A stretch of DNA of 63,864 nucleotides, filler included, from Reticulomyxa filosa (taxonomy: Eukaryota > Protista > Foraminifera), in NCBI GenBank assembly GCA_000512085.1. It is 20 parts of 20 records of this genome, joined end to end, with 100 filler letters (N's around TTAATTAATTAA, not from the genome) between each part and the next. Parts side by side here need not be neighbours in the genome. Positions count along the whole stretch, not along the records: positions 27,846 to 36,558 come from ASPP01010456.1; 19 more parts are not named here. One strand, 5' to 3'. The stretch's first letter is position 1. Each line of letters begins with the position of its first letter. Below, one piece after another: positions 27,846 through 36,658 of the stretch. The notes under the pieces were generated by a model. It saw nothing but the letters and a program-made list of their open reading frames with translations. It did not search any database and had not been told where the DNA came from. Both the position numbers and the translations under genes were made by a program.

Positions 27846-29702
27846 TTATTGTTATTGTTATTGTTATTGTTATTGTCATTGTCATTGTCGTTGCTATTGG
27901 CATTGACATTGACATTAGCATTCGTATTTGCAAAGGAAGCAATAGTAGTGGTTGTGTGCTGAACAGGAGTACGTGAGTATTTCAGTTTGGAGTCATCTAC
28001 AACTTCCGTCTCAGTCGCATGTTTCTCGTCGTGTTTGTTTTCTTTTTGCTGTTGATTCTCCTCGTCCTTTCCTGGCAACCTTGTCATGGAGCACTCCTTG
28101 TCTTGCCAATTGCTTTTGTGTTTTGCATGCAAGTACGTGATAGGCACCAACATGTCATTGGAGATCGGTGGAGACGATGGCAAAGGAGTGCGTAGCGCAA
28201 AGGCGTGGTCACCAACACGGCTACGTCTTTGAGTCGTTCGTTCGTCGGCGTGTCTTTTGCATCAAACAAATGAGCGTGTTTGTTGTTGTATGTTTATATG
28301 TGTGTAAACATAGGGGACTCCAAACTGTGAAACACAGATAACGCAGTAGACTCGTTCGTGGCCTTGGCCCGCCTCAAGGGCAAAAAGGACTCACTTTTGG
28401 GCTGCGCGACACCTGGAATGTCTGCAATGAATAGCTCAATGGTAGGCTCTCGATTGCTCTCTTGGGTCATGGGTGTGAGTTTGTCGGAATACATGTCTGC
28501 ATTGGAACGGAGTTCTCGATTGCGTTCCTCTTCTGCTTCCTCTTTGTCGTTCTCATTGATATGGATGGACACAACAGCAGGGGGAGTCGACACCATCCCA
28601 ATGGTCTCGTTGTCACTTTGGTTTTGACGATATTGCAACAGGTCAATGATCTTCGGAGAGGGCTGGCTGTGCTGTCTCCTTTGTCGTCTCTTGTGTGCGT
28701 AAATACGCAAACCGACGCACAGCACGCACGTAAGCACCGCCATTCCACCCACGACACATCCCACTATCACTGCGTTCAAGTCCGCTCGTTCATTGTTCCC
28801 ATTCGATTGTTGTCCGTGTTTCGCAGTGTCTCCGTCACCACTTCAATGTGTCATTATTATGTTATATTTATATATATATATATGTATGTGTGTGTTGTGT
28901 ACATTTCAAATAAACTTTGATTTTTACATTAGCCAGTATTCTGGATGGGCGGTTAAACAAAGACAAGAGCAAACCTGTATATCAGAGCAGTCGTGTTTGG
29001 GTGCACTCCGAATCCAACGGCCGAGAATTGATTGGTTGACGTAAAAAATACTTTGCGGCTAGGACAGCTGTAGTGATACACTTGACTCATCCAAGATTGT
29101 CTGTGGACATCATACAAACCATACTCCAATGTGCAACGCTTCTCATCTACGTTTCTTATCACGTCTTTCCAACTCTTGTTCGATGACAACGGGATATTAA
29201 TCCAAAATGTAAAACATTTTGCATTGCCGTTTTTACAAATCCAAACACGTCTATCCAAATCAACAACAATAACAACAAAATTCATTTGTTTATTCACTTC
29301 CTCGTTTATGTACAATATATCGTGTTTGCTTTCACGATTTTGTGTTTTCAAACAAACTGTTGTGTTTTCGATACAATCACAATGTAAGCTGTCGATCGAT
29401 TGCTGTCACTATCTTCATCATTGGCGTTAATGTAACAGCTTGTTTCACCGACTGGCACTGGTTCTAATGGCAGAGAGTGGTTGCACAATCCAAGCAAAGA
29501 GTTAGGCCAATCATATTTTGTATTGTCCATTCTGCACAAAAGGTACATGTGTCCTATCAGTGTCATTGACCCATCCGTTGCTTTGGCTCCAACACACATT
29601 GAGTGCTGACCTCTTCCTTTTCAACCACTGTCCACTCAACGTCAGCTGAAAAAATGCCCAAAATAATGTTAACCATTTCATTTCTAGAAAAGTCAATGCC
29701 AT
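27846..29702 (-). CDS. Hypothetical type I membrane protein (signal peptide, Cys-containing ectodomain, one TM, disordered tail), 3'-partial
   Basis: Hydrophobic N-terminus, spliced exons and TM segment AVIVGCVVGGMAVLTCVLCVGL followed by KRRQRR. Apparent 1-nt homopolymer indel near 29517. Confidence 0.55.
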
Positions 29703-30247
29703 GGACGATATTCTTGTTCACAAGAAAAACGCATCACAATGGACACAGTCACCCAACAGTCTTTTTTCTCCAGCCTGTCCCTTTTTTATCGTCCAGTCCC
29801 GTCAGCGACTTTTTTTTGATCGTTACGGGCCGTTTTTGAATTTGTCATGAACAAGGAAATACATAACAATCGAATTGTCAAAAAGACTGCTTATCATACA
29901 TATTTTTTTTGACACAGTGAAAATTTCTAATGAAAATATCTTTCAATATCAGGTGATAGTTCCTAATTATAACCTAAAAAATACCCTAAAATAGTCAAAA
30001 TTCATTTGATGAAAGGCATAAATATTCTTGAATAATCCTTCGCTTTTATTCTCAAAATATTCGATGTTCATTTAAATGTTTATAGTACAATTACAAGACA
30101 AAAGAGCTGAAAAAGTGCTTAATTTGTTTTAAGTTTTTTACCTTCAATTTTTCAATAGCATCGAACGATTTCACGATTTTCTGAATTTTCAAAGAAAACG
30201 TGTGACCAAACAAATAAAAAATAGCACAAAAAAAGCTTAAATACATA

Positions 30248-31406
30248 ATGCAGAACATGCAAGAAAGCCAAAGAGCGCCCAAACCTAGACAAGGAAGAAA
30301 TTTGAATAGTCCAGTGAACAGTGATGATGAAACCACTGGCAATGGAGACAAAAGGAGATATCCAGGTGCACAGTCCGAAAACACAACAGTGAAACTGACA
30401 TCGAAGGATTTGACTCCATTTTTGGTGCCCAGAGAAGCCTGTAGAATGTCAAACTTATTGAAAAAGCAAATGCAAGGTGCTTATAGCTCTCCCACTTTTT
30501 TAATCGCCACGCATTAAATCCATAACAAACAAAAAAACAATAAATTGTTTCAAACTATATTCCGATATCTTTTTTTTGTATGACTTATCCTCACAGAAGA
30601 CCCAAAGCGGAGAGATTTTCCATTGCCTCAAATCAAAGGCAACATTTTGCAAGAGCTTGTGAAGTTTATGATCTACCATCAATCTTATCCGATGCAACCT
30701 ATTGAAAAACCTTTAAGATCTACAAATATGCATGAGGTTATTGGAACATTCATTAAAAAAAAAAATTAAAATAGACCCCCTTTTTTTTTAACGTCACATG
30801 GCAAAAAAAAAAAAGGTGGTATCCTCTTGGGATGCGGATTTCGTAGACATCCATTACGAATCACTGTTTGAAATGATGTCTGCAGCAGAAGTGATGGAAA
30901 TGGAAGATCTACTGGAACTGTGCAGTGCGAAAATGGCATCGATGATCAAAAACAAAACGAGTAAGCAATTGCGAGAAACATTTCATATTGAGCCTGACAT
31001 GGAACCGAGCGAAGAAGAGGCCATTCGACAATCACTGGAATGGATACTTTCAATAACAGCACAAGAACAAAAGTTTGAAGAAGAATGGAAAAGCAAAGAC
31101 GACAATAGTCGAAGTGACACCCCTTCTACGATGCGACAGAGCCAGCCAAAGAGTGTTCGAAAGAGCAGTGAGGACGAATGGTATGATGGTAAGATTAATA
31201 AACGCGCGTTTGGATATGAAATCCCGTTCAGTGAAGAGGAATCCAAACAAGATATCAACAGCTCCAGCAATCTCAGAAAAGAATCGTCTTTTAAGAGCAA
31301 TAGCAACAATCCTTTTGATTTGCTTGTCAATCAAGATAATGAAAGTGCTGCTGGAACCGTCAACTCTAGTCCAGGCAACGCCAATAATAGTGATGCAAGT
31401 AGATAA
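30248..31406 (+). CDS. SKP1: SKP1-family protein with N- and C-terminal extensions, 2 introns
   Basis: VKLTSKD..FLVPREACRMSNLLK, FPLPQIKGNILQELVKF..YH, IEKPLRS.NM, WDADFVD, LFEMMSAA.., LLELCSAKMASMIKNKT..LRETFHI..D..PSEEEAIR. Confidence 0.88.
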
Positions 31407-32340
31407 ATAAATTACATCAATTTCATTTATGTGAGCTTTATTGTTTGGTTTACATTTTTTTTGAAAAAAGAAAAAAGTAAGTAAATAACTATTATAAGAA
31501 GTAATGCATTTATCAAACTATTTGTTCTTCTTTTTCTATCTTTATAAATGATTCTTATGGGGCCACTGTCAATTTTATTTCTTCTAGTTTTTTGAGCCAA
31601 AATATAATCAGTTTTAAGTTAATCCAGATCAAAAATAACAATTTTTTTAATAATGCACAAAATAAAATCGTGCTGATGCATTCAAGAAAAAAACATCCCA
31701 CATATTAACCGATTGATTCTTCTAACATCTCGACTCTTGTTTAAAATAGTTTGCGCCAGGGATAACAGTCCACAGCAATTACAAATATACATATGACCTT
31801 ACCGAAAATGGAGGGTAGTTGATTCTTCACAAAAAATCAACTGTATGTAACATTTAAACTATAAAGGTATTGTTGAAGAAGAACTTTGTTATCTTAAAAA
31901 ATAGATTTTGTTGGTGGACAAAGATAGTTCAATTCTATGTTAAAACATTGTTCAAAACGTAAATTTTGACACATTAATACAAACATGTTTGTGATGGAGG
32001 AAATGATTTTGGAAAAGCTATTTATTTTTGGTAAGGGCACTCTACAATTTTATTGTCCCATGGATGAAAATCTTTGTTATTTTGACTAACAAAACATAGA
32101 AAATAAGTCTGGATTGCACAATAGTTCATTTTGCGATTTACTTGTAGTTGTTATTTATTGTTAACAGTAATGATTTTTATTGTGCTCATTATTTTTTAGT
32201 TTCAATTTAAGAAAAATCAGACTATATTTTATGTTTAAAAGCACGTTTGGAAAAAACACCGTAACAAAAGAGTAATTTTTATCTTGTACACCCGCTTTGC
32301 TCGGAAAATCATCTTTCGCTATCCAACCAATCGATACAAA

Positions 32341-33170
32341 ATGATGAAACTTTTGGCATTGTGCAGTTTGTTGGTAAGTCTTTGTTATGGTCACATGTGC
32401 ATGGTGAACCCCTACCAAAGAAACCCACCAGCGACTTCAATTAACACTCCAGCCACTCCTGCTTGCGGCTTAACAAGTTTGTTGCAACAATTTATAGTAA
32501 ATGTCTTTCTTTAAACATTACCCCCTTTCTCTCCTTCTTCCATCCTTTTTTTATAGCACCACCTTGCGGAGGAACAAGCCCAGACGATTACATTAAAGAA
32601 ATTGTTTCAGACAGCAACCAATGGTTGGTAACTTAATGCTTTCTTTGCACTGCATTACAAAGGAAAACGTCAATACACTGATATTTATACAATAGGGTAT
32701 TCGTGTTGCAAAAAAACAAGAACCATTACAACAGTGCCAGTTAAACTATGTTTTTAAAAAAAGTTATTGAGTTTGGTATACGTTGATTTTCTTTTTTTTG
32801 TAAACAGAACCAGGAAATTTCACGGTCAATGTGTTGGAGTTATGATCGATTTATTGTTGTGTGTACGTCTTTTTTTATCTTTTGTGAACTTTCCTTTTTA
32901 ATAAAAACTCAGTGCACAAATGAACTTTGTTGGTCGCATTGGAGGCATTCCAGACAACAGCTTAGGTGATTTGAGCTTTTACCAATTGTATGTTCCAATT
33001 CCTACCAATTTGGTAACTGGTGATCCTTACATTATTCAAGTTAAGACACAAAAAAACTTTTTTATGTCATCACATCACAAATTGAAATACAATAACAATA
33101 ACTCCAGGCCATTTACTTCACTAACTCCGGCAACAATTATTACCAATGCGCTGATGTTTTGGCACTTTGA
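32341..33170 (+). CDS. Secreted His-brace copper-binding protein (LPMO/X325-like fold), 6 exons, 155 aa
   Basis: Exons 32341-32476, 32557-32623, 32696-32739, 32808-32838, 32913-33039 and 33108-33170 join via GT-AG introns into a 468-nt ORF. It reads signal peptide | HMCMVNPYQR...PPCGG...LQKNKNH...PGNF...IIQAIY...YYQCADV. Confidence 0.75.
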
Positions 33171-33686
33171 GTTATTTGTTGCTTTTGGTGCTTTTTTTTT
33201 TGGTAACTTCATTAAATGAGAAAGGCAATGTCTTCTAAATAAACTTGATTAATCTTACAAGCTCAAAGCTTGCTTGTTAGATGTTGTAGTAAATGAAAAC
33301 TTTTCGAATGGCTGACCATTATGATTTTAGCAAAAAATTTCCTACGTAGAGTTTCTTTGCATCGCAGTTTTGAGTAGTGTCGGGTGAGAAATATGCCGGA
33401 AAACCGCAGTGGTGCAAATTGTTCCTATTACTATTTTTTCGCTCATAATTGTCTCACTAAAACTTAGCCAGCTTTGTTTGTTGATACTTTTCAAGGACTT
33501 TAAAAATTTTTGTAGGAAAAAAAAAGAAAATTGCTAGGCACTGCTAAGAAATAGTGGTGTTACCGGCTTTATTTATCAAAAAGGAAGTTTCAGGCACAAA
33601 AAAGCAGAAGTAAAAACAAATCAAGAATCAACTAATATATTATCAGTTTTTTGCTTTCCCAAGTTTTTTTGTGTGGGTCATAGTTG

Positions 33687-34919
33687 TCACGTACTTTGCG
33701 TTTGAATATCATCGGTAGCTGTTTCCTGTTGAATGGTAACACCATCAACAGAAGGCTTTGTAGTATCACTTGGAGTAGTAGTGGATACGACTTGATCGGC
33801 ATTAGCCGCTGCAGCCATAACGGCAGCCTGATTGGTACCCATTCGCTTGGGTGGTATCCATGAATAAACCAAGTTGACAGCACTAACGCACGACCATAAA
33901 GGAAGATAAATTCCGGCAATGGTGGTGATAGTTTCTTCGACATATTGATATTTGGTATCGGACACAAATGTAATCCATTCGTGAATACTTTGATAAAATA
34001 AGCAGACAACCAAAACAGATAAAACGAAGACCAAGCATAACAGTTTATACATTGATTTGTATAAATTTCGACTCATTTGCATTTTGTTTGTCAAAGAGTT
34101 TCGACGCATTAGCGTGTCATACTGTTGTTTCAATTTCAAAAACAACTTCATTAACAATGCTATCAATGATGACAACAACGCCACAGCAATTAGTTTCCAA
34201 AGTGCATATAACAGTGTTTGAGTCGCATAAAAACTATACACCGAACCTAATAAAAAATAATATGCGGTCACATGATCAAACAAAAAAATTATTGGTCCAT
34301 GTTTGTCTTAAGCAAAGCTCAGATAAGGATCTCACCTAAAATAGTGCCGGTCCAATCAAACACGGCGATAATCAGTACCATGGAGTGACCATAAATGAGT
34401 AGCTTTTCAAAGGTCGATCTTTCACTTATCGATGATTGATGCGAAAACATTCGCATTTTGTTAATATTGGAATATGTCTCGGTCATTCGAAGGGATAGCA
34501 CTGCCAGTGACAACACTGCCACTGGGATCCAGATACTCCATCCCACTTGCATCAATGCTTCTGATTCTTTGCATTTATGTTATGTATAATGTATTACTCT
34601 CCAAAAAGCCTCATTCTTTTTTTTTAAAACATGCTTTGCTGATAAAAATTTTTTCTGTTCTCATACCTAGAAAATAACCCAAAAATACGTCCAACTGAAA
34701 TATGGTCAAAACTAAAGTCATCCAGCGAATATACTCAAATTGTGTTACCTGCGCAAATTGAGATTTTTTCAAATGGTGCGATGTCCCCACTGCTTTTGAT
34801 AGGCCTTGTTTGGATATATGTTGCCTGTACAAGTTGTAACAAGCAGTGCATATCAGCAAAAAGCTGAAGAAAAAACAAAAGGTGAAGCCGACGACATCCT
34901 TAGAAGTAGTACGGACCAT
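33687..34919 (-). CDS. Seven-transmembrane (GPCR-like) protein, 2 introns
   Basis: The spliced product has seven hydrophobic segments, a basic TM5-TM6 loop and a polar C-terminal tail. Confidence 0.65.
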
Positions 34920-36658
34920 ATTTTACTGAAATACAACAAAATGCGAGTTATACACCAAGTGAAAAGTGGAAGGACAATTTCATTTGTTTCATTGTCCCCT
35001 CCAATAAATTCTTTTAGACGTACTAACAAGCACCAAAGGTGTCATGACCTGTACGATGAAATATTCTTGTATCCCGATTGGATAAGGTAAATCGCGCTAA
35101 ACGTATTTTCAATTATAAATTTGGAAAAAAATTGAATAAGTAATGGCCACGAACAAGTCTCACTTTGAAATAAACATTAAATAATTCCTGTAGCTTTTAA
35201 AGTAGAAAGCGTGGGACATCAGCTGCACTAAATGTAATACGAAGGTTTTCTACCCGAAGAAAACTGCTTTTGATAAAACAATAGTGAGTTTACGACTAAA
35301 AGATAATAACACAATAAAAGAAAGAAAAACAAAAACAAGAAGTGAAGAAAGTTGGTGAAGAAGTTTAGCCCACTGGGGGCTCCTCAAAGTTCAGTCATCT
35401 ACAGTATGGACTTGCCCTACAAAAGTGAATTAAGTAAAATCTTTTTGGTAACATTTCAATCTAATTTTTGGAGTGTAATACTGCAGAGAAATGGCTATTC
35501 AAAAAAGTATCTAGACGTGTGCAAGAATGAGGTTTTTGCTGAAGAAATAATTGTTAGTTTTATCTCTTGAATAGTGCATCATGTATTTCAATAATTATCC
35601 AAACTGCTTGTTGTAATCGAGTAAAAGGATGTTTTCAACAAAGTGAATAAAGTATTTTTTCTTTTTTCAAAGATGCCATTACATTGACATATACTGCAAA
35701 ATAATGTAATCACATAACTTGCAAACAGATCATTTTGGAAAATAAAAATAGTGAAAAAAACAATATATAACACTACATTTTTTCATTAAAACATCCTTTT
35801 TTTGAAATGAAAAAAGTTGAAACAAGTACAATCAAGAATACAATCTATTCAAACATGATAATGTCCAAATATGATTACTAACAAAAAAAAGTTAAAAGGC
35901 CGTCATTGCTTTTATATTTTTTTCATTCTGATCGATTCGTCCAATTTAATTTCTGTTGAAACAGCCAAAGAAATATAACTTCGTTTTCACTGACAACAGT
36001 TCACAAATCATTTAATGTCAATATGTCAAAGTGATCTTAGTCAAATATATATTAGTTCTTTTTATGTCCTTTGCAGCTTCAATTCTAAGTTACCAACCAA
36101 CTAACCACTAGCCTGCGCATTTTATCACTCAAAATAGATTTTCTTACTGATCAATGTTTTCCGTTGATATTCCCGTTTGTTTGACACGCTTTTTTCCAAT
36201 TTTGGACAACATTGAAGTGTTTCACCACTTTTCAATTTAAAAGCATTTGCAAAGTTTTTCCATTTGTAAACTTATCACATTACTTCAATATAATGCTTTC
36301 TACTTTCTTCTGTGCTTATTTTGCGTTAAACAGTCAGTATAATTAATTTAAAACTTTTTTTGTTTAGTAAGATAGTTTTTTAACATTGAATTTTCAAACT
36401 CCTGATGAAAAAAAAGGCGCAAAATTTTTCAAATAAATGCAAGAGATAACATATTAAACATAAAAAAAAGAAAGCATGCAATTTGTTCTACGTACTTACA
36501 AAAATATTTTATCTAAATGTAAAAAGTAAGCTTAATGAAAAAACGCGTTTTTATTGATNNNNNNNNNNNNNNNNNNNNNNNNNNNNNNNNNNNNNNNNNN
36601 NNTTAATTAATTAANNNNNNNNNNNNNNNNNNNNNNNNNNNNNNNNNNNNNNNNNNNN

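What the first reader, a model, noticed from the sequence alone, without database searches (positions are those of the whole stretch)
32341..33170. Hidden secreted His-brace protein: candidate uncharacterised LPMO/X325-like copper family
Seen: six small exons, separated by introns of 68-80 bp, splice into MMKLLALCSLLVSLCYG|HMCMVNPYQRNPPATSINTPATPACGLTTPPCGGTSPDDYIKEIVSDSNQWVFVLQKNKNHYNSAKPGNFTVNVLDAQMNFVGRIGGIPDNSLGDLSFYQLYVPIPTNLVTGDPYIIQAIYFTNSGNNYYQCADVLAL. The predicted 138-aa mature chain starts with His and has only one other His (H61). It has four Cys (3, 25, 32, 132) and ends YYQCADV. Established: signal cleavage exposing His1, an H-x5-P-x2-R start, a PCG motif, a second His and a terminal (F/Y)YQCAD(V/I) strand are shared by LPMOs (AA10/AA11/AA15/AA16) and fungal X325/Bim1 copper proteins. 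Inference: it lacks the GDG Asp ligand and GPI tail of X325 and has Tyr129/Tyr130 near the LPMO axial position, yet it is smaller than typical LPMOs. It may be a minimal LPMO or a secreted copper carrier used in prey-wall digestion or cyst/test remodelling.
Basis: partly seen in the sequence, partly recalled or inferred. Interest (0 to 1): 0.82.

Follow-up and report, generated by a model that had tools for sequence, protein, structure and literature searches.

The report
Unannotated secreted LPMO-like foraminiferal protein
A small six-exon gene that the public annotation of the foraminifer Reticulomyxa filosa misses is real and transcribed, and its secreted 138-residue product has the sequence marks of the copper-binding "histidine-brace" proteins (LPMO/X325 kind), but copper binding and fold could not be tested here.

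Summary
Intron-less contigs in four public runs from four studies carry exactly these five junctions; one is a soil metatranscriptome and one contig spans the whole CDS. The contig is Reticulomyxa filosa ASPP01010456.1, where only a wrong 99-aa single-exon ORF is annotated.

His follows a rule-conforming signal-peptide cleavage site. The only PDB hit of exon 6 at E<=10 is LaX325 (6IBH), at the equivalent C-terminal strand, though E is only 0.67. The X325 Asp ligand aligns to Gly, and there is no GPI tail. His1/His61/Tyr129-130 match the spacing predicted for a rhizarian AA11-like LPMO.

Against it, exon-wise Pfam, PDB, word, exhaustive and metagenome searches found no relative.

Verdict: a real hidden gene, and a probable (about 0.55) new variant of LPMO-like copper protein.

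The parts
32341..32476 (+). Exon 1 (136 nt): start codons ATGATG, signal peptide, and mature residues 1-28 plus the first base of codon 46
   Evidence: Translation. The junction 32476>32557 is seen in contigs of X2, X4 and X8.
32341..32391 (+). Predicted signal peptide (17 aa, MMKLLALCSLLVSLCYG)
   Evidence: Sequence and hydrophobicity. The (-3,-1) rule is met by Cys15 and Gly17. This is inference; SignalP was not run.
32392..32421 (+). Predicted mature N-terminus HMCMVNPYQR; the His1 codon CAC is at 32392-32394
   Evidence: No difference is listed here in the X2, X4 or X8 contigs. The nearest listed change is N11D at 32422 in X4.
32557..32623 (+). Exon 2 (67 nt); holds the PCGG motif (32562-32573; Cys32)
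   Evidence: The junction 32622/3>32695/6 is seen in X1, X2, X4 and X8.
32696..32739 (+). Exon 3 (44 nt); holds His61, the only other His (codon CAT, 32724-32726)
   Evidence: The junction 32739>32808 is seen in X1 and X2.
32808..32838 (+). Exon 4 (31 nt); holds the single N-glycosylation sequon NFT (mature 69-71)
   Evidence: The junction 32838>32913 is seen in X1 and X2.
32913..33039 (+). Exon 5 (127 nt), the core beta-strand region ending VPIPTNLVTGDPYIIQ
   Evidence: The junction 33039>33108 is seen in X1 (two contigs) and X2.
32944..32966 (+). Variable loop (mature 87-94, GIPDNSLG) that differs between transcript variants
   Evidence: The X2 contig has 9 clustered substitutions here, giving SVPDTNLT. 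An X1 contig replaces 32913-32966 altogether.
33108..33170 (+). Exon 6 (63 nt including the TGA stop): AIYFTNSGNNYYQCADVLAL
   Evidence: Its only PDB hit at E<=10 is LaX325 6ibh_A residues 117-131.
33138..33158 (+). YYQCADV motif (Tyr129, Tyr130, Cys132)
   Evidence: It is identical to LaX325 over YQCADV.
33238..33243 (+). AATAAA, a possible polyadenylation signal 68 nt after the stop
   Evidence: Contigs reach 33200. This is inference only.

Best explanation
This is a real, transcribed six-exon gene of Reticulomyxa filosa that the public annotation replaces with a wrong 99-aa ORF.

Its 155-aa precursor enters the secretory pathway, and signal peptidase cuts after Gly17, so the 138-aa mature protein begins with His. 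This step is inferred. The mature protein is acidic (pI about 5) and about 15 kDa.

The protein is most likely a single-domain beta-sandwich copper protein of the LPMO-like kind, closest to fungal X325/Bim1 and to AA11. Cu would be held by the N-terminal amine and the His1 side chain together with His61 (a histidine brace). Tyr129 or Tyr130, just before the QC of the last strand, would lie under the metal. Cys32-Cys132 and Cys3-Cys25 would tie the N-terminal loop to the last strand. All of this is inferred.

It lacks the X325 Asp ligand (Gly126 in its place) and has no GPI tail, linker or CBM. The fourth equatorial copper site would therefore be open, as in catalytic LPMOs, and the protein would be released rather than wall-anchored.

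Within this reading I lean about 55:45 to a redox-active LPMO-type enzyme acting on a chitin-like or prey or cyst-wall polysaccharide, over a soluble copper scavenger.
For: Gene and splicing. Annotation gap. Organism.

N-terminal His after a rule-conforming cleavage site.

Exon 6 alone, searched against 177,635 PDB sequences, returns a single hit, LaX325 (6IBH/6IBI/6IBJ). It aligns at the equivalent place, 121-135 of 138 against 117-131 of 155, so the distance from the N-terminus to the motif differs by only 4 residues. [Y]QCAD[VI] is expected only about 0.4 times in the whole PDB by chance. Combined with position at the C-terminal end and His at +1, chance is about 1e-9 per protein (rough calculation).

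X325 binds Cu with a His brace plus an Asp on a Gly-rich loop, whereas LPMOs leave that site free and often have an axial Tyr. Here the loop is TNSGNN, with no Asp, followed by YY.

A rhizarian (Orciraptor) AA11-like LPMO is predicted to bind Cu through His1/His63/Tyr135, close to His1/His61/Tyr129-130 here.

In the diverged transcript variants, the listed changes are synonymous or fall in one surface loop. The N-terminal motif is unchanged.
Against: The LaX325 match is 13 bits with E 0.67, and it rests on the same motif that prompted the finding.

No other exon matches any LPMO, X325 or CopC chain or any Pfam family at E<=10.

No relative was found by word search, by exhaustive phmmer with exon 5, in JGI metagenome or viral contigs, or in the ESM Atlas. 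Conservation of His1, His61 and Tyr is therefore unknown beyond about 94%-identical variants.

The fold, the His-His distance, the cleavage site and metal binding were not tested. Position 61 for the second His matches AA11-like spacing only by comparison of numbers, not by alignment.
Confidence: 0.55

Rival explanations
1. A lineage-specific small secreted, disulfide-stabilised beta-protein with no metal site, for example an adhesive, matrix, cyst-envelope or lectin-like protein. The N-terminal His and the YQCADV end would resemble LPMO-like proteins by coincidence or convergence.
For: No significant similarity to any family in any exon-wise search. The one LPMO-like hit has E 0.67. One loop (mature 87-94) varies between variants, as surface-recognition proteins often do.
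Against: Four features coincide: His at +1 of the signal peptide, an exact YQCADV on the last strand, the same N-terminus-to-motif spacing as LaX325, and a single second His at about 60. This is very unlikely by chance.
Confidence: 0.33
2. Same fold and His brace, but a purely non-catalytic soluble copper scavenger or chaperone. It would be the functional analogue of Bim1/X325 or CopC, handing Cu to a Ctr-type importer. The HMCM start (Met2, Cys3, Met4) would add a soft Cu(I) site. This is a sub-case of the best explanation, and its probability is already counted inside it.
For: The closest structure by sequence is X325, whose members show no polysaccharide activity and act in Cu uptake. The domain is small, with no CBM. 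Met and Cys flank His1.
Against: It lacks the Asp ligand and the GPI anchor that characterise X325. Tyr-Tyr sits at the LPMO axial position. An open equatorial site is the LPMO hallmark.
Confidence: 0.25
3. Not a functional gene: chance GT..AG spacing or a decaying pseudogene.
For: The NCBI annotation does not contain this model.
Against: Exactly spliced contigs occur in four studies, including a metatranscriptome and a full-length variant with an intact frame. Exon and intron GC contents contrast. The spliced mRNA has a single long frame.
Confidence: 0.02

Closest known systems
X325 / Bim1 LPMO-like copper proteins of fungi (LaX325, PDB 6IBH/6IBI/6IBJ; Pfam DUF6595/BIM1-like)
   Same: Both are secreted, begin the mature chain with His, and have a core of about 140 aa. 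They share an identical YQCADV last strand at the same distance from the N-terminus. A Gly-containing loop precedes that strand in both.
   Different: The Asp copper ligand of the Gly-rich loop (GGDGN in LaX325) is absent; the loop here is NSGNN, with Gly126 at the Asp position. There is no Ser/Thr linker and no GPI anchor, which all X325 members have. The host is a foraminifer, not a fungus. No detectable similarity was found outside the last strand in exon-wise searches.
AA11 LPMOs, including the AA11-like LPMOs of the rhizarian Orciraptor agilis
   Same: An N-terminal His, a second His near residue 60 and a Tyr near residue 130-140 form the predicted Cu trio (His1/His63/Tyr135 in Orciraptor against His1/His61/Tyr129-130 here). 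Both are from Rhizaria. The fourth equatorial site is open, with no Asp.
   Different: The Orciraptor protein is 375 aa with a C-terminal transmembrane anchor, while this one is a bare 138-aa domain. No AA11 chain in the PDB is hit by any exon. The residue correspondence is by number, not by alignment.
Bacterial His-brace copper chaperones CopC / PCuAC-like PmoF / YcnI
   Same: These are small (about 100-130 aa) secreted or periplasmic beta-proteins whose processed N-terminal His binds Cu, and they are non-catalytic.
   Different: They have a different fold family and different motifs, and no sequence match was found here. In CopC the Asp and His positions are swapped relative to X325.

Membership tests
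X325 / Bim1-like (Pfam DUF6595) | Signal peptide cleaved to leave His as residue 1 | tested here: inconclusive
   His18 follows a site that meets the (-3,-1) rule (C-Y-G|H) after an 11-residue hydrophobic core. No SignalP run and no protein data.
X325 / Bim1-like (Pfam DUF6595) | Asp on a Gly-rich loop as an additional equatorial Cu ligand | tested here: not met
   In the only alignment obtained, LaX325 TGGDGNLYQCADV aligns to TNSGNNYYQCADV, with Asp opposite Gly126. The ligand is described in PMC7529816. That the GDG Asp is the ligand is my inference from 'Gly-rich loop'.
X325 / Bim1-like (Pfam DUF6595) | C-terminal linker and GPI anchor (all members) | tested here: not met
   The protein ends 3 residues after the motif, with no hydrophobic tail. 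The family feature is taken from PMC8615602.
X325 / Bim1-like (Pfam DUF6595) | Match to the family profile | tested here: inconclusive
   Exons 1, 2, 5 and 6 scanned separately against Pfam gave no family at E<=10.
X325 / Bim1-like (Pfam DUF6595) | Sequence similarity to a solved member | tested here: inconclusive
   Exon 6 gives LaX325 as its only hit, but with E 0.67. The other exons give no hit.
LPMO (AA9-AA17, especially AA11) | His brace: His1 plus a second His brought next to it by the fold | not testable with these tools
   His1 and His61 exist in the sequence. The geometry needs a model of the joined chain, which had to be left out.
LPMO (AA9-AA17, especially AA11) | Axial Tyr/Phe near the end of the domain, and an open equatorial site | tested here: inconclusive
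   Tyr129 and Tyr130 directly precede QCADV, and there is no Asp in the preceding loop. The spacing resembles the Orciraptor AA11-like trio. Position in space is untested.
LPMO (AA9-AA17, especially AA11) | Sequence or profile similarity to a CAZy AA family | tested here: not met
   No AA9-AA17 chain and no LPMO Pfam family is hit by any exon. This is an exon-wise test only.
LPMO (AA9-AA17, especially AA11) | Copper-dependent oxidative cleavage of a polysaccharide | not testable with these tools
   Needs biochemistry.

The most novel reading that the evidence does not exclude
A previously unrecognised foraminiferal family of minimal (138 aa), unanchored, single-domain histidine-brace copper proteins. 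They would be related to X325/AA11 but have an open, LPMO-type copper site. This would be the smallest catalytic LPMO scaffold known, secreted by a naked foraminifer for prey-wall or cyst-envelope chemistry, with a fast-evolving surface loop (mature 87-94) that tunes the substrate or target.
Probability: 0.25. Interest if true: 0.7.

Novelty: new variant of a known kind. Interest (0 to 1): 0.5.

Why it matters
X325/Bim1 proteins are so far described from fungi only, and always with the Asp ligand and a GPI anchor. Catalytic LPMOs are usually larger.

A free 138-aa X325-like domain without the Asp, from Rhizaria, would sit between the two. It could show which features turn a copper carrier into an oxidase. 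It would also extend His-brace proteins to Foraminifera and give a very small scaffold for LPMO engineering.

Practically, it also shows that small multi-exon secreted genes are missed or mis-called in the only annotated foraminiferal genome.

Tried and rejected
Searches that found nothing:
- Pfam on exons 1, 2, 5 and 6.
- PDB phmmer on exon 1, mature exon 1, the first 20 mature residues, exon 2, exon 5 and the second half of exon 5. This gave only noise: ArtB signal peptide, FLS2 LRR and RSC8 low complexity.
- Word search with the stop-free frames that hold exon 5 and exon 1. This found only the window's own 99-aa ORF, or no candidate.
- JGI metagenome contigs with exon 1 and exon 5 (one search was a size slip) and viral contigs.
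- ESM Atlas on exon 1, which gave no named cluster.
- Paralogues inside the 8.7-kb piece.
- Pfam on ORFs of the neighbouring genes, apart from the Skp1 domain found.

Hits rejected as spurious:
- Exhaustive phmmer with exon 5 gave the query itself plus five long repeat proteins. These are Flg_new/List-Bact or TPR repeat proteins. Their scores are sums of roughly 19-aa matches (IPxNSxGDxSFY) repeated 6 times or more.

Not available:
- The Labourel and Garcia-Santamarina papers are not held.

Left out by rule:
- The joined 155/138-aa protein has no reference, so it was not sent to any search, family scan, structure prediction or fold search.
- It was spliced only inside run_python, to verify the translation, to compute its properties and to scan this piece for paralogues.

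Full report
**Where it is**

The piece (window 27846-36558) is the whole 8,713-bp contig ASPP01010456.1 of assembly GCA_000512085.1. A paper names this as the genome of the freshwater naked foraminifer Reticulomyxa filosa.

The record carries four gene calls:
- a 460-aa gene on the minus strand;
- a Skp1-domain gene (window 30798-31406);
- a 278-aa gene on the minus strand;
- a 99-aa single-exon ORF at window 32920-33219.

**The observation**

I read 32100-33400 and spliced the six stretches in a script. The exons are 32341-32476, 32557-32623, 32696-32739, 32808-32838, 32913-33039 and 33108-33170.
- They give 468 nt with no internal stop.
- The introns are 80, 72, 68, 74 and 68 bp, all GT..AG. 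Their GC content is 0.22-0.32, against 0.39-0.45 in the exons.
- The unspliced stretch has 6-20 stops per frame. The spliced mRNA has one long frame.

The decisive check was laying public contigs on 32100-33400.
- Runs X1, X2, X4 and X8 come from four studies. X8 is on record as a soil metatranscriptome; the other three are only guessed to be RNA.
- These runs contain contigs that skip exactly 32477-32556, 32624-32695 (2-base ambiguity), 32740-32807, 32839-32912 and 33040-33107.
- No contig covers any intron.
- One 522-nt contig (X2) spans 32340-33188, the complete CDS, with about 30 differences. A diverged allele or close relative is therefore transcribed with an intact frame.
- The listed differences are synonymous, or they cluster in one loop (mature 87-94, GIPDNSLG to SVPDTNLT). 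There are also N11D and L138I.
- The His1 codon and the following motif show no listed change. Differences within about 30 nt of a piece's end are not listed, so His61, which lies in the 44-nt exon 3, could not be checked.

**The protein**
- The first 17 residues are a short n-region, an 11-residue hydrophobic core and C-Y-G. The (-3,-1) rule favours cleavage before His18. This is inference, because no predictor was available.
- The mature chain is 138 aa, about 15.1 kDa, pI about 5, with one NFT sequon.
- It has His only at positions 1 and 61, and Cys at 3, 25, 32 and 132.
- It starts H-M-C-M-V-N-P-Y-Q-R, carries PCGG at 31-34, and ends YYQCADVLAL.
- It has no hydrophobic or Ser/Thr-rich tail.

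The joined protein was therefore not given to any search, family scan, structure prediction or fold search. It was spliced only inside scripts, to verify the translation, to compute its properties and to scan this piece for paralogues.

**Exon-wise searches**
- Pfam on exons 1, 2, 5 and 6: nothing at E<=10.
- Word search with the stop-free frames that contain exon 5 (99 aa) and exon 1 (91 aa), scoring only the exon part: only the window's own ORF, or no candidate.
- Exhaustive phmmer of exon 5 against 1.84 billion representatives: the query itself plus five long proteins.
  - These five are Flg_new/List-Bact or TPR repeat proteins.
  - Their scores are sums of a repeated match of about 19 aa, so I reject them.
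- JGI metagenome contigs and viral contigs with exon 1 and exon 5: none.
- ESM Atlas on exon 1: no named cluster.
- PDB phmmer on exon 1, mature exon 1, its first 20 residues, exon 2, exon 5 and the second half of exon 5: only noise.

These blanks have little weight for distant relatives, because the queries are only 20-45 aa. They do show that no close relative is present in the protein collections.

**The one positive lead**

Exon 6 (20 aa), searched against the PDB, returns a single sequence at E<=10. It is 6ibh_A (also 6IBI and 6IBJ), "Auxiliary activity CAZyme", 155 aa. A review identifies 6IBJ as LaX325, the founding structure of the LPMO-like X325 family.
- The alignment puts YFTNSGNNYYQCADV (mature 121-135) against VYTGGDGNLYQCADV (chain 117-131).
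- The score is weak (13 bits, E 0.67), and it rests on the motif that prompted the finding.
- Three things make it more than noise:
  - It is the only hit in 177,635 sequences.
  - It lies on the equivalent last strand.
  - The distance from the start of the chain to the motif differs by only four residues over about 130.
- [Y]QCAD[VI] is expected only about 0.4 times in the whole PDB by chance. Combined with the C-terminal position and His at +1, the chance is about 1e-9 per protein. This is a rough calculation from general amino-acid frequencies.

**What the comparison says**

According to PMC7529816:
- X325/Bim1 hold Cu with the His brace plus an Asp on a Gly-rich, flexible loop.
- LPMOs leave that position free for an exogenous ligand and often have an axial Tyr.

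In the alignment, the Asp of GGDGN faces Gly126 of NSGNN. No acidic residue is nearby, and the foraminiferal protein has Tyr-Tyr where LaX325 has Leu-Tyr.

All X325 members are reported to be GPI-anchored (PMC8615602). This protein stops three residues after the motif. Two defining X325 features were therefore tested and not met, so I do not file it as an X325 member.

On the LPMO side, a preprint on the rhizarian Orciraptor agilis reports expressed AA11-like LPMOs. Their predicted Cu ligands are His1, His63 and Tyr135, close to His1, His61 and Tyr129/130 here. This is a comparison of residue numbers, not an alignment. No AA11 chain was hit by any exon.

**Most likely mechanism**

Shown:
- The gene is real, spliced as proposed and transcribed.
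- The product has a signal-peptide-like start.

Inferred:
- Cleavage exposes His1.
- The mature domain is an LPMO-like beta-sandwich.
- Cu is bound by the N-terminal amine and imidazole together with His61.
- Tyr129 or Tyr130 sits beneath the metal.
- Cys32-Cys132 and Cys3-Cys25 form disulfides.
- The fourth equatorial site is open.
- The protein is released, not tethered.

I put about 0.55 on the His-brace copper protein reading. Inside it I lean slightly (55:45) to a redox-active LPMO-type function over a soluble Bim1/CopC-like copper scavenger. The HMCM start, with Met and Cys around His1, would suit a scavenger.

The main rival (about 0.33) is an unrelated lineage-specific secreted beta-protein whose ends resemble LPMO-like proteins by chance or convergence. 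An artefact is essentially excluded.

**Novelty and score**

I found no paper linking Reticulomyxa with LPMOs. X325 is tabulated as fungal. Rhizarian LPMO reports concern larger, membrane-anchored AA11-like proteins.

If the reading holds, this is a new variant of a known kind: a minimal, unanchored, Asp-less X325/AA11-like domain. The interest is moderate (0.5), because the idea is testable and plausible but the key properties (fold, conservation, copper) remain untested.

Noticed in passing
window 32920-33219 (+): The public annotation's 99-aa product (P0001) is a mis-call. It is exon 5, read through intron 5 (phase 0, no in-frame stop) into exon 6 in the wrong frame. The true six-exon gene is not annotated.
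   Followed up: yes
window 32913-32966 (+): The first part of exon 5 varies sharply between transcript variants. The X2 contig has nine clustered substitutions (six of eight codons changed non-synonymously). An X1 contig joins 32838 directly to 32967, with about 54 nt replaced by sequence too different to lay. This may be a fast-evolving surface loop or a paralogue.
   Followed up: partly
window 32340 upstream (5' UTR): The loose 5' ends of the X2, X4 and X8 contigs resemble the genomic sequence upstream of the ATG but are more diverged than the CDS. This suggests the runs hold related strains or species, with purifying selection on the coding part. The organisms are coded, so the habitats are unknown, apart from one soil metatranscriptome.
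   Followed up: no
window 30798-31406 (+): A 202-aa ORF has only the Skp1 dimerisation domain (residues 37-83, E 3e-16). It is followed by a long acidic, Ser/Asn-rich tail. The N-terminal POZ part may lie in an upstream exon.
   Followed up: no
window 32938-32994 (exon 5, residues 9-27): The stretch IGGIPDNSLGDLSFYQLYV resembles the end of the bacterial Listeria-Bacteroides (Flg_new) repeat, IPxNSxGDxSFYxxW. It also weakly resembles plant LRR units (FLS2). This produced repeat-amplified false hits with E as low as 7e-9 in the exhaustive search.
   Followed up: yes
window 33687-34552 (-) and 27908-29530 (-): The two flanking annotated genes (278 aa and 460 aa) have no Pfam family on record or in my scan of their larger ORFs. 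The 198-aa ORF at 33687-34283 looks like a multi-pass membrane protein.
   Followed up: partly
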